A stretch of 64,000 nt of DNA from Macrostomum lignano. Taxonomy: Eukaryota. Under the pieces are notes generated by a model. The model was not told the origin of the DNA. It was given only the letters and a program-made list of their open reading frames with translations, and searched no databases. Positions 7,326 to 60,700 of this stretch are shown here, one piece after another (the stretch's first letter is position 1; every line of letters begins with the position of its first letter). The DNA is taken from positions 62,001 through 126,000 of the forward strand of contig NIVC01002376.1 in NCBI GenBank assembly GCA_002269645.1, given 5' to 3'. The position numbers and the translations under genes were made by a program.

Positions 7326-7592
7326 TCACAGTTCCCCAGTCGCTGGACTGGCGGTCTGCAGATCTCCCTCAGAGGAGCCGTTGAACAGGGAGGCCAGCAG
7401 ACCCAGGGAGTGCTGGATCACGGTGTGGTGCGGCAGGAACACCCAGCCAGTGTACAGCGACATGACCAGAATCAGCACCATGGCTATGTTGAACACTTTC
7501 CGTTCCCAGGGCTCCAGCATGTAAATTGAAGTTTCCACGATGTACTTGAAGTACAGGCTGGAGAGGAAGTTGCCGGGTTCAACTTCTTTCAT
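7326..7592 (-). CDS. SPTSSA: Serine palmitoyltransferase small subunit (SPTSSA/B family)
   Basis: LYFKYIVETSIYMLEPWERKVFNIAMVLILVMSLYTGWVFLPHH matches the family signature Y..Y...T..YMLEPWER.VFN.....I..M.LYTG.VF.P.H. A versus B paralogue assignment is not possible. Confidence 0.92.
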   Translation of the reverse strand: MKEVEPGNFLSSLYFKYIVETSIYMLEPWERKVFNIAMVLILVMSLYTGWVFLPHHTVIQHSLGLLASLFNGSSEGDLQTASPATGEL

Positions 7593-7734
7593 AATTTATC
7601 GATTGGCTGAAAAAGAAGAGAATTTATATCGAAAGCTGATTAGCAGATATATGCAATTATTTCACTAATTAAATATAATTTAGGATGGCAGCACTGAAGC
7701 TAATGAAGAAGGTAGGAACATCTACTGAAGGATC

Positions 7735-9752
7735 TGAGGAGGGCAGCGCCATCTACTGAAGAATCTGAGGAGGGCAGCGCCATCTACTGAAGGATCTGAG
7801 GAGGGCAGCGCCATCTACTGAAGGATCTGAGGAGGGTAGCGCCATCTACTGAAGAATCTGAGTAGGGCAGCGCCATCTACTGAAGAATCTGAGGAGGGCA
7901 GCGCCATCTACTGAAGAATCTGAGGAGGGCAGCGCCATCTACTGAAGAATCTGAGGAGGGCAGCGCCATCTACTGAAGGATCTAAGGAGGGCAGCGCCAT
8001 CTACTGAAGAATCTGAGGAGGGCAGCGCCATCTACTGAAGAATCTGAGGAGGGCAGCGCCATCTACTGAAGAATCTGAGGAGGGCAGCGCCATCTACTGA
8101 AGAATCTGAGGAGGGCAGCGCCATCTACTGAAGGATCTGAGGAGGGTAGCGCCATCTACTGAAGGATCTGAGGGTAGCGCCATCTACTGAAGGATCTGAG
8201 GAGGGCAGCGCCATCTACTGAAGGATCTGAGGGTAGCGCCATCTACTGAAGGATCTGAGGAGGGCAGCGCCATCTACTGAAGAATCTGAGGAGGGCAGCG
8301 CCATCTACTGAAGGATCTGAGGAGGGCAGCGCCATCTACTGAAGGATCTGAGGGTAGCGCCATCTACTGAAGAATCTGAGGAGGGCAGCGCCATCTACTG
8401 AAGGATCTGAGGAGGGTAGCGCCATCTACTGAAGGATCTGAGGGCAGCGCCATCTACTGAAGGATCTGAGGAGGGCAGCGCCATCTACTGAAGGATCTGA
8501 GGAGGGCAGCGCCATCTACTGAAGGATCTGAGGAGGGCAGCGCCATCTACTGAAGGATCTGAGGAGGGCAGCGCCATCTACTGAAGGATCTGAGGAGGGC
8601 AGCGCCATCTACTGAAGGATCTGAGGAGGGCAGCGCCATCTACTGAAGGATCTGAGGAGGGCAGCGCCATCTACTGAAGGATCTGAGGAGGGCAGCGCCA
8701 TCTACTGAAGGATCTGAGGAGGGTAGCGCCATCTACTGAAGGATCTGAGGAGGGTAGCGCCATCTACTGAAGGATCTGAGGAGGGCAGCGCCATCTACTG
8801 AAGGATCTGAGGAGGGCAGCGCCATCTACTGAAGGATCTGAGGAGGGCAGCGCCATCTACTGAAGGATCTGAGGAGGGCAGCGCCATCTGCTGAAGGATC
8901 TGAGGAGGGCAGCGCCGTCTACTGAAGGATCTGAGGAGGGCAGCGCCATCTACTGAAGGATCTGAGGAGGGCAGCGCCATCTACTGAAGGATCTGAGGAG
9001 GGCAGCGCCGTCTACTGAAGGATCTGAGGAGGGCAGCGCCATCTACTGAAGGATCTGAGGAGGGCAGCGCCATCTACTGAAGGATCTGAGGAGGGCAGCG
9101 CCATCTACTGAAGGATCTGAGGAGGGTAGCGCCATCTACTGAAGAATCTGAGGAGGGCAGCGCCATCTACTGAAGGATCTGAGGAGGGCAGCGCCATCTA
9201 CTGAAGGATCTGAGGAGGGCAGCGCCATCTACTGAAGGATCTGAGGAGGGCAGCGCCATCTACTGAAGGATCTGAGGAGGGCAGCGCCATCTACTGAAGG
9301 ATCTGAGGGCAGCGCCATCTACTGAAGGATCTGAGGGCAGCGCCATCTACTGAAGGATCTGAGGGCAGCGCCATCTACTGAAGGATCTGAGGAGGGCAGC
9401 GCCATCTACTGAAGGATCTGAGGAGGGCAGCGCCATCTACTGAAGGATCTGAGGAGGGCAGCGCCATCTACTGAAGGATCTGAGGGCAGCGCCATCTACT
9501 GAAGGATCTGAGGGCAGCGCCATCTACTGAAGGATCTGAGGGCAGCGCCATCTACTGAAGGATCTGAGGAGGGCAGCGCCATCTACTGAAGGATCTGAGG
9601 AGGGCAGCGCCATCTACTGAAGAATCTGAGGAGGGTAGCGCCATCTACTGAAGAATCTGAGGAGGGCAGCGCCATCTACTGAAGGATCTGAGGGCAGCGT
9701 CATCTACTGAAGGATCTGAGGAGGGTAGCGCCATCTACTGAAGGATCTGAGG
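7735..9752. repeat. 2-kb tandem array, 31/28-bp unit (gagggcagcgccatctactgaaggatctgag)
   Basis: About 65 units between the divergently oriented SPTSS and p53-like starts. Confidence 0.98.
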
Positions 9753-10031: not shown

Positions 10032-11901
10032 ATGTTAGCCGCCCAATCGGCACACCTGAGCACAGCAAGCCTACAGCAGCAGCAACTGCAGCATCATCAC
10101 TATCCCTGCATCCTGGACGAGAAGAACGACTCCGTTTCACATATCGATTTTAGCCTCGTCAGAGCCATGACCGACTCCATGCATCCCAGTCAGCAGCAAC
10201 AGCAGCAGGACATGGTGTGGGGTGGCGGCCAAAACTCCGTGATGAAGTTTGACTGCATGGGCGCTCAGGACGGAGTCTTCCAGCAGCACTGGTCGCAGTG
10301 CGGCGGCTTCACAAAGTGAGTCTCAGGGGCGGATTGTGTCTCACTCCCAGAGGGCGGATTGGGTGCCTCAGGGGGCGGATTGTGTCTCACTCCCAGAGGG
10401 CGGATTGGGTGCCTCAGGGGGCGGATTGTGTCTCACTCCCAGAGGGCGGATTGGGTGTCTCAGAGGGTGGATTGGGTGTCTCAGGGTGTGGATTGGGTGT
10501 CTCAGGGGGCAGATTGGGTGTCTCAGAGGGTGGATTGGGTGTCTCAGGGAGCGGGTTGGGTGTCTCAGGGGGCGGATTGTGTCTCACTCCCAGAGGGCGG
10601 ATTGGGTGCCTCAGGGGGCGGATTGTGTCTCACTCCCAGAGGGCGGATTGGGTGTCTCAGAGGGTGGATTGGGTGTCTCAGGGTGTGGATTGGGTGTCTC
10701 AGGGGGCGGATTGGGTGTCTCAGAGGGTGGATTGGGTGTCTCAGGGGGCGGATTGGGTGTCTCAGAGGGTGGATTGGGTGTCTCAGGGAGCGGGTTGGGT
10801 GTCTCAGGGAGCGGGTTGGGTGTCTCAGGGGGCGGATTGGGTGTCTCAGGCGGCGGATTGGGTGTCTCAGAGGGTGGATTGGGTGTCTCAGGGTGTGGAT
10901 TGGGTGTCTCAGGGGGCGGATTGGATGTCTCAGGGTGTGGATTGGGTGTCTAAAGGGGGCGGATTGGGTGTCTCAGAGGGTGGATTGGGTGTCTCAGGGA
11001 GCGGGTTGGGTGTCTCAGGGGGCGGATTGGGTGTCTTAGAGGGTGGATTGGGTGTCTCAGGGAGCGGGTTGGGTGTCTCAGGGGGCGGATTGGGTGTCTC
11101 AGGCGGCGGATTGGGTGTCTCAGGGGGTGAATTGGGTATCTCAGGGGGCAGATGACAGCAGACGACAACAGTGCATCTCCCGCATTGAGAAAACAACCAA
11201 CGATGACCAGCCACCTACCCCCACCCGATCCATCTCACACCCAGCGACTTCCGGCTGAACAATGACGCCTACTACAACAGCGGCCAGAACGCGGCGTCAG
11301 CTTCGGCAGCCTCGGCGATGAGCGGCGGCAGCCCCTGCGGAGCCCAGAGCTCCGTCATCAAGACGCCTTCATCGACAACCCCCAGCCACTGCAGCCAGCA
11401 GCAGCATCTGGCTGACCAGTCAGACGGTCTCATCGACCTGGAAGTCGACGCTCCGACCAGTTCAGCGACGCCAACAAGTCACCCCGACGACGCCAGCATC
11501 AGCACCCAGAGCGAGGCGGGCCCGTACAACCTGCAGCTGAGGCTGGAGGAGATCGAGTCCCAGACTGCGGCTTCGTTTCACCAGCGACTGAATGCTTCGG
11601 GCGGGTCCAGCCTGTGGTATGCCATCGGCTTCCACTCGGCAGAGAAGGACATCATGGAGAGGGCGCTGACCGCGCCAGACGAGAAGATCACTAAGAGCAT
11701 CGTGTTGAAGAACCGGGAGGTGCTGGCCAGCCTCTGGTGCAAGGAGCTGGCGCCCGTGCGGCTCTACCTGCACGGCAACTTCGAAGCCGCCGCGGCTAAC
11801 AACCAGGCTGTGCGGCTGGTGATTCGGTGCGGGGCCTTCAGACAGCACCAGCTGCCCGTCAAGGAGTGAGTGGCCGCCTTTCTGTATTTCTGTCCTGTCT
11901 G

Positions 11902-11935
<34 letters not shown>

Positions 11936-11936
11936 A

Positions 11937-11998
<62 letters not shown>

Positions 11999-14900
11999 TT
12001 ATCTCAATCAATTATCTATCCCTAACCCCTGCGCCTGGGACCACACAAAGACCCAGTAGTGAAAACCAGCCCTAGATTGACGGTCTAAGTTGAAGAGCAG
12101 ACGAAACAAACAACTGGAGACAAACTTGGCCAGATGCCAGACAGACACCCAAAAATATGAGAGGGCTTCTCACAGTCCGCACACGACTCCGACTCATTCC
12201 CTCTCGCACCATTTGCCCCGGAATGGGTCTCACGCACCGAGCTCTAAAGGCGCCCCCTCAAAGCCTCCGTGCCCTCAGTTACGCAATAATGAAAATGCCT
12301 CTATTCGATAGAAAAGTTTCAATTGCCGATTAGAAAGAAGAAAAGGAAGGGAGAGAGGAACCCACCAGCCAGTCCGAAAGCACGGATTCCTTCTTTGTTT
12401 GTAGAATGCTGGGCTTGGCTGACTGGCAGACAAAAGATGATTGCATCACAGCAGCATTGGTAGATATATCATTACCAAATGTAACTGATGTCTATCTGCC
12501 CACTGGATCAGGTGCTCAGCCAGTTGGGGGGGGGGGGTAGCAGGTCTAGGTGGGTCAGTCAGTCACGCATGAAGGATTACCAAGCAGCCCACAATAAAGC
12601 CTTGGATACTGCTGATGTGCCATGCTAGAATTCGCCCCCCCACACCCCCTAAGGGAGATTTAACGTAACAGGCTTATACCGCTCAAAACCTAGCGCTAAA
12701 AACCACAGGCAAGACTAAAAACAAAGAATACTGTGATCGCCTCAAGCACTGATGCATGACCGAGGTGACAATGCTCAAGTTAAACAAAACAAGTGTAAAC
12801 TGTAGAAGACGCAACGCTTGAATGGCAAAATGTGTTAAAAAGTCAAACTGGCCTCGAGGCAAAAGCAATGGATTTAACAGGCTCGCCCGATCTTTAGCGT
12901 TGACAAAGACATTATTATTTAAGTCTTTGTCGATGGCCTATGGCCCTCGCTCTGAGCTCAAACCCCCCAACACGGCCCCAACTCATTCTATTTCCGATCG
13001 ATTTAGTTAGCCAGCACAATTCTGCGATCTTGGCACCGTGTCAAAAACTCACCCCCAACCCCTCACCTCCCCGCCACGAACCGCCCCCACCCACAATTTC
13101 TACCTTGGTTTCCATCATGCCTTTGGGCCTTCCCGCTCAGTTTTATGATTCAATTTTTCCCAACCCCACTGCCCAAAACCCGCTCTTTGTGTGGCATCGA
13201 ACTCTACATAAAGTTTGTTGATCGTGGGAAAACAGCGACCAGAACCAACCCGCCTTTGCAAACTTTCAGAGCGGGAATTTTGAATGTCACCGGTTGTGTT
13301 TTTCTACCAGAGCGTGGCTTGTTTATGAAAAAAAAGCGAACCCATTGTTCTGTACTACTCTGCTGCTTTTGTTGTTTTTGCTTCCACCGCCAGTCAGTGC
13401 ACAGACTGCAATTATGACCTCTATAATTGTGTTTATGATTAAATAATATTATCTTTACTATGGGATGAGACATATTTGGGATATAACTATATTCTGAAAA
13501 TTGTTGTAAACAGAATCGTGCCACAACTGCCATGCTTGTTTAATTTTCTTGACCAGTGACAATGCTCCTGTCTCATTGGCACTCTTGGCTAGGCAATTTG
13601 TTCATGGCGCCTTCTGACTCTCACTTCATATCGCTTTCTGACTCTCACTTCATATCGCTCTCTGAATCTCACTTCATATCGCTTTCTGACTCTCACTTCA
13701 TGGCGCCTTCTGACTCTCACTTCATGGCGCCTTCTGACTCTCACTTCATATCGCTCTCTGACTCTCACTTCATATCGCTTTCTGACTCTCACTTCATGGC
13801 GCCTTCTGACTCTCACTTCATATCGCTCTCTGACTCTCACTTCATATCGCTCTCTGACTCTCACTTCATATCGCTCTCTGAATCTCACTTCATATCGCTT
13901 TCTGACTCTCACTTCATGGCGCCTTCTGACTCTCACTTCATGGCGCCTTCTGACTCTCACTTCATATCGCTCTCTGACTCTCACTTCATATCGCTCTCTG
14001 ACTCTCACTTCATATCGCTCTCTGACTCTTAATTCATGGCGCCTCCTGACTCACTTTATGGCGCCTTCTGACTCTCACTTCATGGCACTCCCAGACTGTA
14101 ATTCATGGCGCCTCCTGACTCACTTCATGGCGCCCCCTGACTCTAATTCATGGCGCTCCCAGACTCTAATCAATGGCGCTCCTAGACTCTAATTCATGGC
14201 GCTCCCAGACTCTAATCCATGGCGCTCCCAGACTCTAATCCATGGCGCTCCCAGACTCTCACTTCATGGCTTTTAATCTATAATTCAAGCCTCGCTGACA
14301 CAAATTTCAAAGCAAACTTATGAAAAACTCCAACCAGACAATCTAATACTTAGCAAAACAATTCGCTAATAACTAACATGGACAGTGAGACAGTGAGTCA
14401 TCTACTAAGAGAAGAATGAAAACTGAGCACTGACTGAGCAGGGAACACAAAGGCATTAAATTAGAAGCCAGAACTTGGCAACTGTTTCAAATTCCATAAC
14501 TACCTGCTGTTATTAGCATTATTAAGATTTTAATCACTTATTAAAGCAGACTTATAGTAGCTCCCTCTCAGATCTACGCTTTACGCAATCAGTGTGTTGC
14601 CGCGGATTCCTGGAACTGAAGGTTGCGCTGTGAGTCACACTGCCTCATCCCTCAACTCAGTTATAATGTACGGATCTGGATTTTGTTGCCAAGGCCTCGT
14701 AAAAGCTGAATTATAAATTCGAAAACCTTCTCTGTCAGAGTCGGGTTGGGACAGTTGAGAACAATTCCTATTACAACGCGCCAATGATAAATGATTGAGA
14801 ACGTTGGCACTGTATCAAAATGCTAGACAGCTTGAAACTTGGCTTTAAAATCATAAAGCAAAAAGTAATGCAAAACAGGCAGGCGACTCCCCTCCCCCCA

Positions 14901-17900
14901 CACTCGGAACCGCAATAACAAGAAACCACACAACACAAGTTAGTCAGTTAGTCAGAGCAGATGACAAAAAGGGCCCCGTGTTTTCAAACTTTTCAAAGGG
15001 GACTTCTGGGAGCCTGTATTTTACAATGTTGTTTTTTTAGCAGAGACTGGAGTGGGGGGATCTCGCGAGTTCATCAAGAAATGAAATATCTCGGTAAACG
15101 AAGCAAAGCTTATTTATCTCGTCTTTATAAAATATTCCGCATTTAACAATGCCAAGCAATAAAAGCCGCCTAACACTCCTTCAATCCGGAGCTGAAAAAA
15201 TATTAACCGAAAAACTTGCGCATTGTTTGAGGAGTCTCTCTGCCTTAAAACCCTTAGTTGCTAAGGTCCAGAAAAATGATAGAATAGAAGATTGGGGTCG
15301 TTAAGAAGAAGCGGCACGCGAAACCGCCAGGTGCCCCCCTAGGACCCCCCCCCCGCTGGCCTGTCAAAACGGAAAATTTCCAGTGACTGACTGGGACGGG
15401 GGGAGAGCGAGTGGCTGCCTCAGCAGCTGCCGCCACGAACCCCCCTCTCCTCCCCCAGACCCATTCAGACCGAGCTCCAGTTGCTGAGCATGACTCACGA
15501 TTCACCGCCCGAGCAGCCTGGCACTCAAGCGAGCACAAAGAGTCATAACAGAACGGCGGCACAGAGCGGCAGGAGGGAGATGAAATGCTGATGAAATTTA
15601 TATTCGCTGAACAATGGCCGCTCCTATACCTCAAAGACCAATATAACAATAATTTTTATGCGCAGAAAATATAAAATGGGGGAACTCGATGAGCATGACT
15701 CACTCAGCATCTTGCACTCGCTAGCCAAGAATAATTATCTTTCTATTCGAGTGTCATTCTCTACCCTGCGCTTGGCTGACAGATATTTATGGCTGGCAAC
15801 ATCTTTGTAGTTTTATATTTCCACAACAAAAATGACGCGTGGGTCACGTGGCTTCTTTCTAAAGGAAATAAAAATAATACGCAGGATTAAAAAATAGCTG
15901 TTTGCTACCTACAATTAATTTATATTGCCTGTTACTATCAAACTACTAGATATCGAACTGATTAGCGAACCAATTTTTTAAATAAACGCGCAAATTAAGA
16001 TGTTATCTTAAAATATTGAAATACCCTCCCAGATCCTCAGTTGCTGGGCCACCAGTCTCCGACTCCCAGATCCCAAGTTGTTGGGCCAGCCTCCCATGCA
16101 GATCCTCAGTTGCTGGGCCAGCCTCCCAGATCCTCAGTTGCTGGGCCACCAGCCTCCCAGATCCTCTGTTGTTGGGCCAGCCTCCCAGATCCTCATCATC
16201 ATGCTGGAATCCTTGACTCAAGCTCCGTCTCTCACACGCCCCCCGCAGGTGCACAGTGTGCAGCGATCAGAAGCACCGCGGAGGCTGGTACGGAGCGGAC
16301 AAGCGCGACACGAACTCGTCCAAGAACATCCCGGAGGCGCTGCAGGCGTACTGGCCGGCGGACAGCCGCAGCCCCACGCTGCACAAGAACAGCCTTGTGA
16401 TCGTGCGTCACGACTCGGTGGAGTACCACACGGACAGCCGCGACCGAGTCTACGCCGTGCTGCCCATCAACAATCGGCAAAGCAGCGGGCCCATCGAGCT
16501 GATGCTCTATTACACCTGTATGACAACGCACAGCCACGACGCCACGGCGCCAAACTCCAAGGACACGTTCACCTCGGTGCAGCTGGAGACTCTGGACAGC
16601 CTCACCGGCCGCTGGTTCAGCCAAGGCCGCTGCGTCTTCCGCATGCGCATGGTCACCTCGCCGGAGCGGGACATTCTAAACGAGGTCACGCAGTTTCTGA
16701 CGCCGGCGCAGATGGGCTGCCGGATGGGCTGCGGCCACCTGGAGTCGCACAACACTCGCTGGCAGAGGGCCAAGGTGCTGCGCACACAGGGTCAGGAGAA
16801 GTTCGACTACTATGTGCAGCTGTACGGCTCTGAGCCGGGCGTCAAGTGCAGCAAGGCCAAGGCCAAGAGCAGACAGGCAACCGTGAGTTTCAGATTAGTC
16901 CCGATTAGATTCCTTGATCCCCAGTGCTGGCACAGACCAGAGATTTGAGATCCGACTTAACTATTTTTGTAGGCTAACTAGAATCCCAATAAACTCCCTA
17001 TAGAATCCCAATAATCTCCCCATTGATAACATCGAAAACTCAAATAGCAGCCACTTTCATAAGATCGAAATTTCACAATATAAAAACTGAGAATTTAGCA
17101 GCCTTAAGTATGACAAGGTCAAAATTTCACAATGTAGAAAACTAAAGTTTTCATTGTGTCAATGTTTATATTATTTATTTTTGTTTTAATAACTATTTGA
17201 GTTTTCGATGTTGTGAAATTTGGACCTTGTGCAATAATTTGCTTTAAGACGGTGTAAAATTTCGACCTTGTGAAAGCACCCCCATAGAAACCCAACAAAA
17301 ATCCCGATAGAAACCCAACAAAAATCCCGATAGAAACTCAACAAAAATCCCGATAGAAACCCAACAAAAATCCCGATAGAAACTCAACAAAAATCCCGAT
17401 AGAAACCCAACAAAAATCCCGGTAGAAACCCAACAAAAATCCCGATAGAAACCCAACAAAAATCCCGATAGAAACCCAACAAAAATCCCGGTAGAAACCC
17501 AACAAAAATCCCGATAGAAACCCAACAAAAATCCCGATAGAAACCCAACAAAAATCCCGATAGAAACCCAACAAAAATCCCGATAGAAACCCAACAAAAA
17601 TCCCGATAGAAACCCAACAAAAATCCCGATAGAAACCCAACAAAAATCCCGATAGAAACCCAACAAAAATCCCGATAGAAACCCAGCAAAAATCCCGGTA
17701 GAAACCCAACAAAAATCCCGATAGAAACCCAACAAAAATCCCGATAGAACCCCAACAAAAATCCCGATAGAACCCCAACAAAAATCCCGATAGAAACCCA
17801 ACAAAAATCCCGATAGAAACCCAGACAAAAGCCTCGAAAAATCGCAACAAAGACTAAGATCTACTCAAAGACAACTAAGGCAACTCAAAACTCTATTAAT

Positions 17901-18352
17901 CCTGAATTCCTCCTAAGGGCTCCAACGCCGATCCAAGTGACGAGCTCGAGCTGCTAGACGGCGGAGCGGCGTCGGCAGTGCAGACCCTGCCGTCCGCATC
18001 AACCGACAGCCTCAGTCAGCTGGAGGTCCTTGAGCAAGCAGCGGACGGCAGCCTTATTATACGCGGCGCCCTGCTCAGCAACCAAGACAGTCGCGAGCTG
18101 ATCGCCAGCGCTCTGAGAGCCTACCTAGCCAGCCTGCCGCTCATTGTCAAAGGCGTCGCCACTGCCGCGGCCGCTGCCACAAACAAGCTGGCCAACTCTG
18201 CTGCCACGAAGCAAGAACCCGGGCAGCAACAGCAGCAGCAACAGCAGGTCATGCCGCGCGAGAATTCGCCTGCGGACTCTCTGCACAGCAGCGCCCACTG
18301 CCCATCTGTGGCATCGAGCACCGGGGAGCACAACAATGCCACCTCTGTCTAG
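10032..18352 (+). CDS. Highly divergent p53-family transcription factor (spliced)
   Basis: Exons 10032-10315, 11245-11865, 16249-16882 and 17918-18352 join in phase (AA|C, GA|G, phase 0). The DNA-binding domain aligns by eye to p53: YAIGFHS~FRLGFLHS; LWCKELAPVRL~MFCQLAKTCPVQL; VEYHTDSRDRVYAVLP~VEYLDDRNTFRHSVVVP; YYTCMTTH~YNYMCNSSC; LETLDSLTGRWFSQGRCVFRMRMVTSPERD~[25 protein letters not shown]. Confidence 0.8.
10320..11146. repeat. Intronic 21-bp G-rich minisatellite (ctcagggggcggattgggtgt)n
   Basis: Begins immediately after the gtgagt donor at 10316. Confidence 0.96.
11898..12000. repeat. (TATC)n microsatellite
   Basis: Direct inspection. Confidence 0.97.
13600..14280. repeat. 24-bp minisatellite (ctctctgactctcacttcatatcg / ggcgcc variant), decaying at the 3' end
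   Basis: Direct inspection. Confidence 0.95.
16022..16200. repeat. Short degenerate tandem repeat (cccagatcctcagttgctgggccagcct) upstream of the exon 3 acceptor
   Basis: About 6 imperfect units. Confidence 0.85.
17280..17825. repeat. Intronic 23-bp minisatellite (cccgatagaaacccaacaaaaat)n
   Basis: Direct inspection. Confidence 0.97.
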
Positions 18353-18424: not shown

Positions 18425-19540
18425 CAGCAACCCGAATCTACTATGAAATCTGCTCCCCCTAGCAACCCGAATCTGCTTTGAAATCTGCTCTCCTAGCAAC
18501 CCGAATCTGCTTTAAAATCTGCTCTCCTAGCAACCCGAATCTACTTTGAAATCTGCTCTCATAGCAACCCGAATTTGCTTTGAAATCTGCTCTCATAGCA
18601 ACCCGAATCTGCTTTGAAATCTGCTCTCCTAGCAACCCGAATCTGCTTTAAAATCTGCTCTCATAGCAACCCGAATCTGCTTTGAAATCTGCTCTCATAG
18701 CAACCCGAATCTGCTTTGAAATCTGCTCTCCCTAGCAACCCGAATCTGCTTTAAAATCTGCTCTCATAGCAACCCGAATCTGCTTTGAAATCTGCTCTCC
18801 TAGCAACCCGAATCTGCTTTGAAATCTGCTCTCATAGCAACCCGAATCTGCTTTGAAATCTGCTCTCCTAGCAACCCGAATCCGCTTTGAGATCTTCGCT
18901 TCCTTAGCAACCCGAATCTGCTTTGAAATCTGCTCTCCTAGCAACCCGAATCTGCTTTGAAATCTGCTCTCCTAGCAACCCGAATCTGCTTTAAAATCTG
19001 CTCTCCTAGCAACCCGAATCTGCTTTGAAATCTGCTCTCCTAGCAACCCGAATCTGCTTTAAAATCTGCTCTCATAGCAACCCGAATCTGCTTTGAAATC
19101 TGCTCTCATAGCAACCCGAATCTGCTTTGAAATCTGCTCTCCCTAGCAACCCGAATCTGCTTTAAAATCTGCTCTCATAGCAACCCGAATCTGCTTTGAA
19201 ATCTGCTCTCCTAGCAACCCGAATCTGCTTTGAAATCTGCTCTCATAGCAACCCGAATCTGCTTTGAAATCTGCTCTCCTAGCAACCCGAATCCGCTTTG
19301 AGATCTTCGCTTCCTTAGCAACCCGAATCTGCTTTGAAATCTGCTCTCCTAGCAACCCGAATCTGCTTTGAAATCTGCTCTCCTAGCAACCCGAATCTGC
19401 TTTGAAATCTGCTCTCCTAGCAACCCAAATCTGCTTTGAAATCTGCTCCCCTAGCAACCCAAATCTGCTTTGAAATCTGCTCCCCTAGCAACCCGAATCT
19501 ACTTGGAAATCTGCTTGCTTAGCAACCGGAATCTAGCAGA
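18425..19540. repeat. 34-bp minisatellite (agcaacccgaatctgctttgaaatctgctctcct)n with an internal ~410-bp duplication
   Basis: Identical ORFs at 18732 and 19143 show the higher-order duplication. Confidence 0.96.
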
Positions 19541-51011: not shown

Positions 51012-53354
51012 TGTCTGAATTTTTTCCTCAGAACCGTTTTGACCGCTGGTCAGACTTGTCGAGAGCTTTCTCCAAGTCTAGCGCTCTAGCGCCGGTTAAC
51101 AGCGAAGCAAAAGCTCCTGAGCAGGTCTTGGTAGAGCTTTGAGCATCGCTAAGCAGCTGCAAGCTTGGTCTTGGTAGAGCATTGCAGCGCTCAAGCAGAA
51201 AGCACGCTCCTGAGCAGGTCTTGGTAGAGCATTGCTAGTGCTATAGCTCTGGTTTCCCAGCCTAACCCTATTGGCAGGAAATCAGTTGGTGAAGCCATTC
51301 TGCTAGTGTCTATTCGCGACACAGGCGCGAATAAGAGTGAGAGTGAGTGTGCAGTCGCAGCACTCGTGCGCGATTCTAAGAATAGCTGTTAGTTTATAGG
51401 CCTAGAGTCTATTGCTGCCGCAGGCGCATAGACCTTTCCTCGCCGCCCATCCGCGCGAAACGTAGCTATTAGGTTAGTAGGAGTTAGGGGTCCTCTGAGA
51501 GCTAAACTCAGACACGCTCAAGCGCGGACATTGTCAGTGCCAGGACTGCGCCGCTCAGGCCATTTGCTACCATTGAGTCCTGTCACTTGGACATTGAAAT
51601 ATCTGAGACTAGTTGTTCTAGCGTTATTTATTTGCGTGGAGCCCAAACAGACCCCTTCATTGCGGATCCTACGGTTCCCACGCTGTTGGCAGCACTACCC
51701 TTGATCTTAGATTTCTCCCCAGTCTCAACCCCCATAAAAGTGTTCGCTAAGGTTGTCCGGGACGACAGCAGTCCACCCCACCCCAGAATCCAGAGAGCCA
51801 AGTATAACACTGGTGATAGCGGTGGGATTTCAAGATCTACAGACCCGAGCCAAAGCAACCAGAAGCGAGGGCACTTTATTGGTGGCAGCGGTGGGATTAC
51901 GATACCGACTCCAACTCCAGACCAAATAGTTAGGAAGTTTAGTAGTGAAGCAGCTGTTGGGAATACCATACCAATAAGCGCTCAAGAGGGAATAGCATCC
52001 TATCAGTTAGTAGATAGATTCCCTAGTATATCAGCTATTAGTATTAGACGCGCGAAGCTCGCTGCAAGTTAGAATCAGTTAAATTCTCGCCTTATAAAAG
52101 TGAGAATGTCATTGAACCGATCCCGTTCGTTAGAGAGTGGTTCAGAGCAAATTCCGAATGCGAACAGGGGCGCAGCCGCCGCTGCAGCCGCCTCTTCATG
52201 CGCTAGCCTGATGGTGGCATATTTGGAGCAGACGCAGACTTCATTAGAGGTCTTGGCGCAGGCGTAAATGCTAACCTGCTGCAAAACCTGCTCGTAAATA
52301 TGAACAGGCAGATGAATTTGCAGACTAAAAAGCAGATTAAAATCGCCAAGTACAAGTCATCAATGGACATTCGAATTTGGCTCGAAATGTTTGAGATGAA
52401 GTGCGAGAGAGAAGAAGTCTACGACATGAGAGAGAGGAAAGCTTTAATCATGGATAGCCTAGATATGGAGACTGCCCTCGCCGCAGTTCTGCATATGAAG
52501 CTACCCCATGACCTTCCTTATCACAGCTTTAGGGAGCAGCTCATTGAGCGCTTCGAGAAGCTTAGCGGACCAAACGCCTATAGGGAAGAGTTTCGCTCTC
52601 GATTACAGCGAAAGAATGAGTCAGTTGATGACTATGCTGAAACGCTTCAGGCACTCGGAGAACAAGCATACCCGAACCTGAGAGCTGACCAAATTGAGAT
52701 AGAGCTCGTAGATGCTTTCACCCGCGGTGTACGCATAAGCCCTGACACCGCGAGAAGCTTCTACTGATGCAACCGGCTACGATTATGGAGGCAAAGCGTG
52801 CGCTCAAGCGCATAGAGGCTGCGCGAGAGTTCGCCAATCGAACTCGTGACGCGCCCGTCAGGATGATGCAAGATGACTCGCGATCATCAGAGCATTCCAT
52901 CCCCAAAGGCCTCCAAGAGTTGATGACAAGGCAGACAGCCGCGCTGGAACGCCAGCAGCAGGCTACGCAGCAGCTGCTTGAGCTTGTAAGCTCGCAAAGC
53001 GCGTGTCCGCCAGGACAACAGCAGCCGAGAGCTGCGCATCACCACCAGTCCCGCTGGTCGAGCAACGTCGAGATTCCGAGATATCGTCAGCGTGCAACAT
53101 GCTACGGCTGTGGCCAGGAAGGCCATCTTCTCGGACAATGCCAGCGCTACAAAGAGCAGCAAGCGCTCGGAAAGCGCTATTCGTGTGAACGCTGCGGAGA
53201 GTCAGGACATGCTGTCCAAGACTGTCCCGCGCGTGGTATTGATCGACAGTACAAGAAGAAAGTTTCGGGAAACGGCGCCGCAGGCGGTTGCGACGGCAAC
53301 AACCCCTGCGTCAACAGCCATGAGCCCGTAGCCAAGAACACCCGGCGACAGTAA
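51012..53354 (+). mobile_element. 5' part of a Ty3/gypsy-type LTR retrotransposon (LTR, tRNA-Leu PBS, gag)
   Basis: LTR 51012-51809; PBS tggtgatagcggtgggat at 51811 and tggtggcagcggtgggat at 51880, complementary to the tRNA-Leu 3' end; gag follows; pol is absent. Confidence 0.88.
52300..53354 (+). CDS. gag, split into two ORFs at TGATG 52765-52769, with two CCHC zinc knuckles
   Basis: WLEMFE...FRSRLQRKNESVDDYAETL (capsid-like); CYGCGQEGHLLGQC and CERCGESGHAVQDC. Confidence 0.88.
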
Positions 53355-57798: not shown

Positions 57799-60700
57799 AT
57801 GAATCCACCAAAGCCAAAGCAGCCTCGTAATAGCTGTATAACAGCATGGCTCTTACCAGCACCAGCCCAGGGGCCCAAGGCTACTGCTGGTCCTGCCCAG
57901 GCCACTGCTGCATGCACTGCGTCTGCGTCTATTGCTCCTGCTGCCCAGGCCACTGCATGCACTGCGTCTGCATCTGCATCTGCTGTCCAGGCCACTGCAT
58001 GCACTGCGTCTGCATCTGCATCTGCTGCCCAGGCCACTGCATGCACTGCGTCTGCGTCTGCATCTGCTGTCCAGGCCACTGCATGCACTGCGTCTGCGTC
58101 TGCATCTTCTGCCCAGGCCACTGCATGCACTGCGTCTGCATCTGCATCTGCTGCCCAGGCCACTGCATGCACTGCGTCTGCATCTGCATCTGCTGCCCAG
58201 GCCACTGCATGCACTGCGTCTGCATCTGCATCTGCTGCCCAGGCTACTGCATGCACTGCGTCTGCGTCTACTGCTCCTGCCCAGGCCACTGCATGCACTG
58301 CGTCTGCATCTGCATCTGCTGCCCAGGCCACTGCATGCACTGCGTCTGCGTCTGCTGTTCCTGCCGAGGATCATTCAGTTTCAAAAGCTGGAAAAAGCTT
58401 TACAAAGTTTCAAAGCCGCTATTTGTTGATGTTTAACTGGCTCGAGTATGATGGGAAGGCAGACAAGGCTATTTGCCGCCTATGCAGAGCCTTTTCACCA
58501 GCAACGGAGCAAATTTTTACGCCCGGAAAGGATGGGTGGCGCTTGCATGTGCTGAAAAGGCATGTTAAATGCCAGACACATCAGGCTGCACTCGCTGTAC
58601 CCAAGTCGCAAGCCAACTGGAAGAGTGCAGTCGAGGAGAACGTCCGCCGCGCTCGGCCTGAAGTGAAGTGTAAGTCAGTGGATTTTCTGCCATTCCTATT
58701 GTTGAGACTTCTATTTTTAGATGTATATTTAATATTAAAAATATTAATGTACATACATATATGTGTATCTCTCTCTACCCTACCCCACCCTTATTAAAAC
58801 CAGGCCAGATGATGAACATCTTGTTCTGCCTCCAGAAGGAGCGGCCAATTTCATTCGCATCAGAGTTGCATACTCTGGTAAGAACGCAGCTTGAGCAACT
58901 CACACGGCAGCCCGAATCACAGCCGAATCAGGCTGTGCCTGGCAGCGAGTCTGCAGCACCGGTTCGACCTGGCACTGACAGTGACACGGTTGACACCCCA
59001 GCCCCAGGTCATCATTCTGCACAAAGAAGCAACCCCTGCAACTTCATAATGTCAGCTCATCACTGCTCGAATTACGCAACATACCAGTTTGCTGCAGCTA
59101 TGGACAGCTGGGTGAAGCAGGATGATGTCAAAACACTCCAGAAGGCTCCCTGTTTCAGTTTGCAGGTAAGTACTTAGTACCGGTATTGATACTGATTGAA
59201 TTAGGATTGACTATTGATTACTAAATATAGGATTGTCTTATATGTTCCTAATCCTAACCCTCAGGTTGATGAGGTCACTGACCGTTCGATGGAAAAGTCA
59301 CTCCTCATTATGGTCAACGTTGCCGATGTGAGCCAGGCTGGTGCAACTCAGCCTCTAAAAACGCTTCACTGGAAGCTGTGCGCTCTGGAGCGTGGAACGG
59401 CCAATGACATAACGGAAGCAATTCAGCGTAGCTTCTCCAGTCGAGGTGTGAGCCTCAGAAAGTGCATACTTTTTGTGTCCGATGGTGCTGCTGTGATGTT
59501 GGGTCGCCATAACGGAGTAGCACGTCAGCTACAACGAGCCAGCTGCCCAATGCTGACGGAGTTGCACTGCGCAGCGCATCGGCACAACATATGCGTCCGT
59601 GACGCGTACGAGGCCTGTCAGGTTATAAGCACGGTTGATGACCAGCTGCACGGCCTTATCGCCTATCTGAGGACATCGAAAAATTTGAAGCTGCTAAAAA
59701 GACTCGGCCAAATTCTTCAGGAAGTAAGTCTTGGTTAAGATACAACCTCATTCAATGCGAATCCAGAGAAAAATATCAATCCCGACGGCATCACATATTC
59801 CAATTACAGACATACACATCCATTCGATCCCTAATTATTTCTATGCAAAACTTTGAGAAAGTTACACAATCAATGGTTGTACAAAACCTCCAACTAAGTC
59901 AAGCCTAATCGCCCTAATGTCAAGCATTACTCACATGATGCCTCACTCTACCTGCAGGATTTTGTGCGCCCTGAGCGTTTTATCGACGTCAGGTGGCTTG
60001 GGCGCCACACAGCAGTCAGTTGTATTTTTCGCTCGTTGTCTGTTATAATGACTCTGCTCGAGTCAAATGCCACTTCGGATGTAGACAGCGGCGGTGCTAA
60101 AGCTGTTGCTCAAGGCCACCTGAAGACGGTCTGCAGCACAGGCTTTCTACTGACGCTGGCAGTTATGCATGACGTGCTGGGCATCATGGCGCACCTGAAC
60201 AAGGCTTTCCAGCAGTACGTTTGTATTTAATCCTGGTTCTTGTGCCACTTCCCACACCTAGCTCGTATAATAATGTTGTATCATTACTTCGTCTTTAACC
60301 TCCTAGCAGCATCCTTACTTTCTCCCTTACATCCTCGACCTCACCTGATCAGGCACGGCTTGCATCCATTCGACCTGAGAAGCCGTGTCAAAGCCGCCCA
60401 AATTGAGCTGCAGTCCGTACTGCTGGACGACCGTGGGAAGCTTCGCAGAACTCCGTCCATGGAGCAATTGCAGGAACTCCTGGACCTGAACTTAGAACTG
60501 GAACCATCGGATGTACCTGCTACTGACCAAATTGGTTCCAACCGACTGAACCGAGTTTCTGCGCGAACACGAGCCGAAATTGCAGCAGCTTGCTCAACTT
60601 CAGTGTTGATAACCCCTATCGCTGACCAGCTGACTAACTTCGTGCATCAGTTAATTAAGAATTTGGCCGACCGGTTCCCTGATGTAAAACGATCAGAGCC

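What the first reader, a model, noticed from the sequence alone, without database searches (positions are those of the whole stretch)
11245..16882. Divergent p53-family DNA-binding domain with apparently swapped zinc ligands
Seen: splicing 11865 to 16249 (GA|G) gives LPVKE-CTVC-SDQKH, and the L3 region reads YYT-CMTTH. Known: p53 binds zinc with C176/H179 and C238/C242. Here the pattern is C-x2-C plus C-x3-H, so the His appears moved from L2 to L3. R273, P278, R280 and D281 equivalents are kept (FRMRMVTSPERD). R175 is E, C277 is S, and the R248/R249 loop is lengthened and lacks RR (HSHDATAPNSKD). Inference: a lineage-specific p53 paralogue with a rewired Zn site and altered minor-groove readout, possibly with new specificity. 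Standard ORF annotation would miss it because the domain spans a 4.4-kb intron.
Basis: partly seen in the sequence, partly recalled or inferred. Interest (0 to 1): 0.8.

Follow-up and report, generated by a model that had tools for sequence, protein, structure and literature searches.

The report
Divergent flatworm p53-family gene, permuted zinc ligands
The window carries a four-exon Macrostomum lignano gene for a very divergent p53-family DNA-binding protein in which the histidine of the zinc site appears to have moved from one loop to the other; a second, distant paralogue in the same species shows the same pattern, and the public gene model for the window gene is mis-spliced and mislabelled.

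Summary
Exon 2 (11245-11865) and exon 3 (16249-16882) join GA|G across a 4,383-bp GT-AG intron and read ...LPVKE-CTVC-SDQKH..., YYTCMTTH and FRMRMVTSPERD. The window is Macrostomum lignano. The gene has four exons (10167-18352, 612 aa) with GC3 of 0.83.

Its only public model (UniRef A0A1I8GLG0, named 'START domain-containing protein') mis-splices this junction and loses the first Cys.

Homology to p53 is real but remote:
- Pfam P53 scores 18-20 bits, below the 27-bit cutoff.
- hhalign against a 26-member p53/p63/p73 alignment gives E = 1.3e-4.
- Low-confidence AlphaFold models of this protein and of its only relative hit only p53-family DNA-binding domains in the PDB (E = 3.5e-7 and 3.4e-5).

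That relative is M. lignano PAA59970.1 (25% identity, weak C-terminal SAM match). It has the same C-x2-C plus C-x3-H pattern, and its RECAQC is encoded inside a single exon. It also shows the permuted pattern is a conserved trait of this M. lignano family, not a quirk of one paralogue.

Zinc geometry, expression and DNA specificity remain untested. Verdict: a new variant of a known kind, of moderate interest.

The parts
10167..10315 (+). Exon 1 (MTDSMH...GGFT, then split codon AA|C). Start codon as in the public model. The frame stays open upstream to 9840.
   Evidence: tblastn of P0001 is 100% identical. Donor is AA|gtgagt and GC3 is 0.82.
11245..11865 (+). Exon 2. It encodes a low-complexity linker and the N-terminal half of the DNA-binding domain: S1 GPYNLQLRLE (11519-11548), a family-specific ~45-residue insertion (11546-11686), the K120-equivalent ITKSIV (11687-11704), and S3/S4 up to LPVKE.
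   Evidence: GC3 is 0.83. The segment 11728-11865, dropped by the UniProt model, has GC3 of 0.89 in this frame.
11866..16248 (+). Intron 2 (4,383 bp, gtgagt...cag). It is full of (TCTA)n and of 24-bp and 28-bp minisatellites.
16249..16882 (+). Exon 3. It encodes L2 to H2 of the DNA-binding domain plus a conserved C-terminal extension.
   Evidence: GC3 is 0.88.
16250..16261 (+). C-T-V-C (Cys258/Cys261 of the 612-aa protein). These are the proposed equivalents of C176/H179 in L2/H1.
   Evidence: Conserved as C-A-Q-C in P0002. A greedy hhalign extension aligns VKEC to VKRC. AF2 predicts a helix starting right after the first Cys, as for H1 in p53.
16517..16531 (+). C-M-T-T-H (Cys347/His351). These are the equivalents of C238/C242 in L3.
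   Evidence: hhalign aligns CMTTH to CNSSC. hmmsearch aligns P0002 CPSSH to CnssC. Conserved in P0002.
16553..16564 (+). N-S-K-D, aligned to N247-R248-R249-P250. The minor-groove Arg is replaced by Ser, a Lys remains, and three extra residues lie upstream.
   Evidence: hhalign alignment. P0002 has S-K-K-G at this position.
16637..16672 (+). FRMRMVTSPERD, the S10/H2 loop-sheet-helix motif. R273, P278, R280 and D281 equivalents are kept. C275 is V, A276 is T, C277 is S and R282 is I.
16715..16738 (+). G-C-R-M-G-C-G-H, a conserved C-x3-C-x-H motif after H2. It is absent from canonical p53 proteins.
   Evidence: Invariant G, C, G, C and H between the two paralogues.
17918..18352 (+). Exon 4, read in one frame to TAG (18350-18352). 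It encodes a Q-rich tail containing GSLIIRGALL...RELIASALRAYL (18047-18127), a weak candidate oligomerisation segment.
   Evidence: GC3 is 0.73 throughout. No significant similarity to P0002 or to Pfam P53_tetramer.

Best explanation
This is an intact four-exon gene of Macrostomum lignano for a highly divergent member of the p53/p63/p73 transcription-factor family.

Its DNA-binding domain keeps the p53 beta-sandwich and the loop-sheet-helix DNA contacts (Lys in L1, and the R273, P278, R280 and D281 equivalents).

The zinc that ties loop L2 to loop L3 is most likely bound by Cys258 and Cys261 (C-x2-C, in place of C176/H179) and by Cys347 and His351 (C-x3-H, in place of C238/C242). The site would still be Cys3His, with the His supplied by L3 instead of L2.

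This arrangement arose before the duplication that gave this gene and its SAM-bearing paralogue PAA59970.1.

Shown: the sequence features, their conservation between the two paralogues, and the p53-type fold at low confidence.

Inferred: zinc binding by these four residues, sequence-specific DNA binding with a weakened minor-groove contact, and expression with the proposed splice.
For: Organism and exons: P0001 (UniRef A0A1I8GLG0, M. lignano) is 100% identical to the window exons.

Gene model: all four exons have GT-AG borders. CDS GC3 is 0.83, against intron GC of 0.37-0.46.

Homology:
- Pfam PF00870 gives E = 0.0008-0.006, covering profile positions 91-189 of 193.
- hhalign gives E = 3.9e-4 against human p53/p63/p73 and E = 1.3e-4 against 26 family members, in the expected register.
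- Foldseek on unbiased AF2 models returns only p53-family core domains in its top 50. For the window protein, E = 3.5e-7 over ~200 columns. For the paralogue, the top hits are Alvinella p53, p63, p73 and p53 at E = 3.4e-5.
- The predicted secondary structure follows the order S1, S3, S4, H1, S5-S8, L3, S9, S10, H2.

Ligand pattern:
- All four residues are conserved in a paralogue that is 25% identical overall.
- The paralogue's RECAQC lies inside a single exon.
- Canonical members have His at 179 in 25/25 and Cys at 242 in 26/26.

Literature:
- Only C176 and C238 are invariant in remote holozoan homologues (PMC6981761).
- A p53-type motif marks the epidermal lineage in three flatworms studied; this paper mentions M. 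lignano (PMC11398382).
Against: - Sequence support is sub-threshold: Pfam gives 18-20 bits against a 27-bit cutoff.
- Searches of PDB sequences with phmmer and with a two-sequence profile found no p53.
- My own vertebrate-heavy HMM gave only 10.3 bits for the paralogue and -1.5 bits for the window protein.
- The N-terminal half, including L2, is not significant on its own. MAFFT misplaces the C-x2-C.
- The AF2 models are poor (mean pLDDT 46 and 49). TM-scores normalised by the target are 0.42-0.49, below 0.5.
- A His lies 4-5 residues after the C-x2-C in both paralogues (H266 in the window protein). It could be a ligand instead.
- No transcript evidence was available.
Confidence: 0.62

Rival explanations
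1. It is a p53-family domain, but the zinc site is not a simple swap. The metal would be bound by a different set of residues, for example C258, C261, the nearby His (H266 here, H126 in the paralogue fragment) and C347. His351 would then be structural, or the site would be three-coordinate or lost.
For: Both paralogues have a His shortly after the C-x2-C. The greedy hhalign path puts H179 next to that His rather than on C261. L2 is ~25 residues longer than in canonical members.
Against: That His is not positionally conserved between the paralogues (x4 against x3 spacing). The C-x2-C and the C-x3-H are invariant and keep the canonical spacing of C176-x2-H179 and C238-x3-C242.
Confidence: 0.2
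2. It is a decaying or fast-evolving duplicate with no sequence-specific DNA-binding role. The motif matches would be remnants.
For: The protein is extremely divergent. Only two 50%-identity clusters (this gene's own public model and P0002) were found among 1.84 billion representatives. R248, R175, R249 and R282 equivalents are changed. No NCBI protein model exists for this gene.
Against: The open frame is intact across four exons with consensus splice sites and strong GC3 bias. Conservation with a deep paralogue falls on functionally meaningful residues: the ligands, R273, S-P-x-R-D and the H193 equivalent.
Confidence: 0.1
3. The exon 2-3 junction is different, as in the UniProt model: an 11-nt 'intron' at 11717-11727, a donor at 11752, and an acceptor 7 nt downstream at 16256. 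The C-x2-C would then not exist in the protein.
For: UniRef A0A1I8GLG0 reads ...KNREPLVQGAGALCSDQKH....
Against: That model needs an 11-nt intron and a weak donor (C|gtgcgg). It deletes strands S3-S4. The paralogue encodes the matching segment and E-C-x2-C colinearly.
Confidence: 0.05
4. It belongs to another family with a p53-like fold (CP2/Grainyhead, NDT80, Runt, T-box, Rel) rather than to p53/p63/p73.
For: Pfam P53 is below its gathering score. The fold class is shared by several transcription-factor families.
Against: No other Pfam family was hit even at E <= 10. The top 50 Foldseek matches for both models are all p53, p63 or p73. The R-x-x-x-x-S-P-x-R-D motif and the Cys/His pairs are p53-specific features. 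The paralogue has a weak C-terminal SAM match, as in p63/p73.
Confidence: 0.03

Closest known systems
p53/p63/p73 DNA-binding domain (Pfam PF00870), e.g. human p53 core or the Alvinella pompejana homologue (PDB 7PC6)
   Same: Beta-sandwich with a loop-sheet-helix. R273, P278, R280, D281, K120 and H193 equivalents are kept, as are the C176 and C238 equivalents. There are four Cys/His at the L2/L3 positions with canonical spacing.
   Different: - H179 is Cys and C242 is His.
- R175 is Glu.
- R248/R249 are Ser/Lys, with a 3-residue longer L3.
- There is a ~45-residue insertion after S1, and L2 is ~25 residues longer.
- A conserved GCxxGCxH extension follows H2.
- Only ~17-24% identity, below the Pfam threshold.
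M. lignano PAA59970.1 / BOX15_Mlig030740g1 (P0002)
   Same: The only detectable relative (E = 2e-16, colinear over ~290 residues). It has the same C-x2-C / C-x3-H pattern, the same insertion and the same GCxxGCxH.
   Different: Only 25% identical. It has K-K at the R248/R249 position and a weak C-terminal SAM match. Its intron positions differ.
Flatworm p53 homologues: Smed-p53 and Schistosoma p53-1/p53-2 (PMC9478680)
   Same: They are flatworm p53-family genes with a DNA-binding domain and no Pfam-detectable TAD, tetramerisation or SAM domains. Paralogue pairs with split functions are known in parasites.
   Different: Those proteins pass the Pfam P53 threshold. Their zinc ligands could not be compared here. 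p53-2 was reported to be absent from the free-living flatworm genomes/transcriptomes examined (19).
Remote holozoan p53 homologues (PMC6981761)
   Same: Only C176 and C238 are invariant, so the second ligand of each pair can vary.
   Different: No reciprocal His/Cys exchange conserved across paralogues was reported in the passages I read.

Membership tests
p53/p63/p73 family (PF00870 DNA-binding domain) | Profile match above the Pfam gathering score | tested here: not met
   The score is 16.9-19.8 bits against a 27-bit cutoff (E = 0.0008-0.006), and only the C-terminal half is covered. The paralogue has no hit. This is an operational threshold, not a biological definition.
p53/p63/p73 family (PF00870 DNA-binding domain) | Profile-profile homology to family alignments in the correct register | tested here: met
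   hhalign gives E = 3.9e-4 (3 sequences) and E = 1.3e-4 (26 sequences, 95 columns, probability 53%), covering S6 to H2. The support is modest.
p53/p63/p73 family (PF00870 DNA-binding domain) | p53-type beta-sandwich with L2/L3 loops and an S10-H2 loop-sheet-helix | tested here: met
   In Foldseek against the PDB, the top 50 hits are all p53-family cores for both paralogue models (E = 3.5e-7 and 3.4e-5, probability 1.00). The models are poor, however: mean pLDDT 46 and 49, and TM normalised by target 0.42-0.49.
p53/p63/p73 family (PF00870 DNA-binding domain) | DNA-contact residues R273 and R280 and the P278/D281 helix cap | tested here: met
   FRMRMVTSPERD aligns to FEVRVCACPGRD.
p53/p63/p73 family (PF00870 DNA-binding domain) | Zinc ligands C176, H179, C238 and C242 | tested here: not met
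   The residue identities are C, C, C, H instead of C, H, C, C. All four positions still hold potential ligands. The literature shows that only C176 and C238 are invariant in remote homologues (PMC6981761), so this does not exclude membership.
p53/p63/p73 family (PF00870 DNA-binding domain) | Actual zinc coordination by the four residues | not testable with these tools
   No model coordinates were available, and model confidence at L2/L3 is below 50.
p53/p63/p73 family, full-length architecture | Oligomerisation domain C-terminal to the DNA-binding domain | tested here: inconclusive
   There are two weak candidates. VLRTQGQEKFDYYVQLY gives BLASTP E = 0.16 against the human tetramerisation domain. 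The other is GSLIIRG... in exon 4. There is no Pfam P53_tetramer hit and no significant similarity to the paralogue.
p53/p63/p73 family, full-length architecture | SAM domain (p63/p73 type) | tested here: not met
   None is present in the window protein. The paralogue has a sub-threshold SAM_2 match, E = 0.014.

The most novel reading that the evidence does not exclude
Macrostomid flatworms carry an old, independently duplicated pair of p53-family genes with three shared departures from the canonical domain. First, the zinc site is obligately permuted, with the His donated by L3 instead of L2. Second, there may be a second, family-specific Cys2His(His) metal site, formed by the conserved GCxxGCxH extension and the conserved His in the N-terminal insertion. 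Third, one copy (this gene) has lost the R248-type minor-groove contact. If so, a free-living flatworm has split p53 functions between paralogues independently of the parasite p53-1/p53-2 split. Domain-based surveys would have missed both genes.
Probability: 0.25. Interest if true: 0.65.

Novelty: new variant of a known kind. Interest (0 to 1): 0.5.

Why it matters
The p53 zinc site is marginally stable, and mis-ligation or loss of zinc underlies several cancer mutants. A natural domain that keeps Cys3His but moves the His to the other loop, conserved across two deeply diverged paralogues, would be a useful comparison for how that site tolerates rewiring.

For flatworm biology, the result shows that M. 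lignano has at least two p53-family genes that fall below Pfam detection. This bears on the claim that the free-living flatworms surveyed lack an orthologue of the parasite paralogue p53-2 (PMC9478680). It also bears on which factor reads the p53-type motif reported in the epidermal lineage of the flatworms studied (PMC11398382).

On the practical side, the public model of this gene is mis-spliced, lacks the first zinc ligand and carries a misleading name.

Tried and rejected
- phmmer of the spliced protein and hmmsearch of the two-paralogue profile against PDB sequences found no p53 hit. The only hits were chance matches to a dioxygenase and to ribosomal protein eL19.
- The word-indexed homologue search with the protein, and again with the two-paralogue alignment, returned only the gene's own UniRef model.
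- Exhaustive phmmer over 1.84 billion representatives found only that model and one paralogue.
- A look-up of contigs encoding P0001 found nothing on record.
- A metagenome scan with the two most conserved peptides found no relative.
- A home-made HMM from 26 mostly vertebrate family members scored the flatworm proteins weakly, at 10.3 and -1.5 bits.
- hhalign on the N-terminal half alone was not significant, with E = 0.058 and 0.38.
- hhalign in global mode gave a nonsensical register.
- MAFFT with the family misaligned L2. I therefore did not use that alignment for a second, circular AlphaFold run. I modelled the paralogue instead.
- Exon 4 against the paralogue by BLASTP showed nothing significant.
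- No Pfam P53_tetramer or SAM domain was found in the window protein.
- I considered the UniProt label 'START domain' and rejected it. There is no Pfam support, and the fold matches are to p53.
- I could not obtain other flatworm p53 sequences. The Pearson and Sanchez Alvarado 2010 paper is not held, and no supplements are held for PMC9478680. Whether the swap extends beyond M. lignano is therefore unknown.
Full report
**1. What is in the sequence**

The stretch 11245-16882 consists of two exons separated by one intron. Exon 2 starts at 11245, just after ...cacccag. It ends at 11865 (...CAAGGA) before a consensus donor, gtgagt. An in-frame TGA follows at once if the donor is ignored. Exon 3 starts at 16249, after ctctcacacgccccccgcag, and ends at 16882 before another gtgagt.

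Joining 11865 to 16249 rebuilds a GAG (Glu) codon. The join gives ...AVRLVIRCGAFRQHQLPVKE|CTVCSDQKHRGGWYG.... Further on come ...IELMLYYTCMTTHSHDATAPNSKDTFTSVQLE... and ...GRCVFRMRMVTSPERDILNEV.... The intron is 4,383 bp.

**2. Organism and full gene**

The spliced protein matches a single database entry, UniRef A0A1I8GLG0 of Macrostomum lignano (P0001, 486 aa, named 'START domain-containing protein'). Its exons are 100% identical to the window, so the window is M. lignano genomic DNA.

Using that entry, I placed exon 1 at 10167-10315 and exon 4 from 17918. Read in a single frame, exon 4 runs to a TAG at 18350-18352. The resulting model has four exons, all GT-AG, and encodes 612 aa.

GC at third codon positions is 0.83 over the CDS, against 0.48 at second positions. 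Introns 2 and 3 have GC of 0.46 and 0.37.

The public model differs at exactly the junction in question. It inserts an 11-nt 'intron', uses a weak donor at 11752 and uses an acceptor 7 nt downstream. This replaces 52 residues (VLASLWCK...LPVKECTV) with PLVQGAGAL. It also aligns colinearly with the paralogue described below. No transcript data could be consulted.

**3. Is it a p53-family domain?**

Sequence evidence alone is weak but consistent.
- Pfam P53 (PF00870) is the only family hit at E <= 10. It scores 16.9-19.8 bits (E = 0.0008-0.006), below the 27-bit gathering score, and covers profile positions 91-189 of 193.
- phmmer against PDB sequences found nothing relevant.
- An exhaustive phmmer search of 1.84 billion representative proteins found only the gene's own model and one other protein, P0002.
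- P0002 is PAA59970.1, BOX15_Mlig030740g1, also from M. lignano. It matches at E = 2.2e-16 with 25% identity, colinear over residues 4-296 of the query.
- P0002 has a weak C-terminal SAM match (SAM_2, E = 0.014) and no Pfam P53 hit.

A profile of the two paralogues was compared by hhalign with typed human p53/p63/p73 domains and gave E = 3.9e-4. Against 26 real family members retrieved (vertebrates, Alvinella, a snail), it gave E = 1.3e-4 with probability 53% over 95 columns. In both comparisons the register is the expected one:
- SVEY aligns to A-x-Y (S6).
- YTCMTTH aligns to FMCNSSC.
- NSKD aligns to NRRP.
- VQLE aligns to ITLE.
- GRCVFRMRMVTSPERD aligns to GRRCFEVRVCACPGRD.

Structure prediction used only the two paralogues as the alignment, so no p53 information was supplied. 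The models were poor: mean pLDDT 45.9 and pTM 0.49 for the window protein, and 49.4 and 0.50 for P0002. Even so, Foldseek against the PDB returned only p53-family core domains in the top 50 for both.
- For the window protein, the hits were human p53 at E = 3.5e-7, probability 1.00, about 200 columns and TM normalised by target of 0.42-0.45.
- For P0002, the hits were the Alvinella p53 homologue, p63, p73 and p53 at E = 3.4e-5 and TM of 0.40-0.49.

The predicted secondary structure follows the p53 order. It runs S1, then a helical insertion, S3, S4, and a helix starting directly after the first Cys (the position of H1). A long L2 follows, then S5 to S8, L3, S9, S10 and H2.

I conclude that the protein is a genuine but very divergent member of the family (about 0.85). 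The caveat is that the TM-scores are below 0.5 because the models are poor.

**4. The zinc ligands**

In the sample of 26 canonical members, position 176 is Cys in 24/25, 179 is His in 25/25, 238 is Cys in 26/26 and 242 is Cys in 26/26.

The window protein has C-T-V-C (Cys258/Cys261, 16250-16261) and C-M-T-T-H (Cys347/His351, 16517-16531).

The L3 pair is placed by significant alignments. For P0002, hmmsearch aligns CPSSH to CnssC.

The L2 pair is placed less securely.
- The N-terminal half is not significant alone.
- MAFFT misaligns it.
- Only the greedy hhalign extension pairs VKEC with VKRC.

Three things support the L2 placement:
- Its position between S4 and S5.
- The predicted helix right after the first Cys.
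- [VL][KR]EC[TA][VQ]C[SA][DE] is one of the two most conserved peptides between the paralogues.

All four residues are invariant between paralogues that share only 25% identity. In P0002 the RECAQC is encoded inside one exon (L001 12011-13282). No splicing choice is therefore involved in that gene.

The stoichiometry stays Cys3His, which fits a compensated exchange. This is inference. I had no model coordinates, and confidence at the loops is below 50, so geometry was not tested.

There is an alternative ligand. A His follows the C-x2-C in both proteins, but at different spacing (x4 here, x3 in P0002).

**5. Other features**

Kept residues:
- The K120 equivalent (ITKSIV).
- R273, P278, R280 and D281.
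- The H193 equivalent.

Changed residues:
- R175 is E.
- N239/S240/S241 are M/T/T.
- R248/R249 are S/K, whereas P0002 has K/K.
- C275 is V.
- A276 is T, as reported for Drosophila p53 (PMC4323202).
- C277 is S.
- R282 is I.

Features shared with P0002 and absent from canonical members:
- A ~45-residue insertion after S1, containing a conserved A-[ST]-x-H-x-R-x-N motif.
- An L2 about 25 residues longer.
- An extension after H2 with an invariant G-C-x2-G-C-x-H (16715-16738).

Nine of the 20 Cys/His in the window domain are conserved in P0002. Four are the putative ligands and one is the H193 equivalent. The other four are H24, C276, C280 and H282 in construct numbering. These four could form a second metal site, which is speculative.

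No oligomerisation domain could be established.

**6. Mechanism proposed**

The protein is a sequence-specific transcription factor of the p53 family. Its L2 and L3 loops are tied together by a Cys3His zinc site whose His comes from L3. It reads the major groove through the Lys in L1 and the R280 equivalent, and it contacts the backbone through the R273 equivalent. Its minor-groove contact is weakened or repositioned.

Because the two paralogues share the permuted site, the exchange predates their duplication. This gene is the SAM-less, more derived copy.

**7. Comparison and novelty**

Variation of the second ligand in each pair has precedent in remote holozoan homologues (PMC6981761). I found no description of a reciprocal exchange conserved across paralogues. 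I also found no paper describing M. lignano p53 genes among those searched.

Work on parasites describes p53-1/p53-2 paralogues and reports no p53-2 orthologue in the free-living flatworm genomes/transcriptomes examined (19) (PMC9478680). The pair here is a separate, deep duplication in a free-living species. Neither gene reaches the Pfam threshold.

I could not retrieve other flatworm sequences, so the phylogenetic extent of the swap is unknown.

Classification: a new variant of a known kind. Interest is moderate, at 0.5.

Noticed in passing
window 16715-16738, and residues 275-281 of the P0002 fragment used here: A G-C-x2-G-C-x-H motif just after helix H2 is invariant between the two paralogues. 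The His in the N-terminal insertion (ASFHQRLN, 11570-11593) is also conserved. Together they might form a second Cys2His2-type metal site that canonical p53 proteins lack.
   Followed up: partly
window 11717-11752 and 16249-16256; 17966-17990: The only public protein model of this gene (UniRef A0A1I8GLG0) contains an 11-nt 'intron', a frame switch in exon 4 and the name 'START domain-containing protein'. UniRef A0A1I8HBP9 (P0004) fuses the paralogue to the neighbouring 2-hydroxyacid dehydrogenase gene.
   Followed up: yes
window 9000-9752, 10348-11153, 11898-12004, 13601-14270, 16063-16195, 17280-17830, 18426-19534: Every intron and both flanks of the gene are filled with long minisatellite arrays: units of 31, 21, 4, 24, 28, 23 and 34 bp, with up to 38 copies. 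One array ends ~50 bp upstream of the exon 3 acceptor.
   Followed up: no
window 10275-10292: The N-terminal exon encodes V-F-Q-Q-H-W. This F-x3-W spacing is reminiscent of the p53 TAD1 motif F19-x3-W23. It may be chance.
   Followed up: no
window 7329-7595 (minus strand): An ORF with high GC3 matches Pfam SPT_ssu-like (small subunit of serine palmitoyltransferase, E = 1.3e-15). It is a divergently oriented neighbouring gene.
   Followed up: partly
window 52300-53354 and 57799-58797 (plus strand): The first stretch holds retrotransposon gag and CCHC zinc-knuckle ORFs. The second holds an ORF with a C17orf113-type zinc finger that overlaps a Cys-rich repeat. These are probably mobile-element remnants.
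   Followed up: no
L001 10001-17088 (NIVC01002207.1): The paralogue's introns lie after VSLVA|S and near residue 518. Neither coincides with the window gene's introns, so intron positions were not conserved after the duplication.
   Followed up: partly
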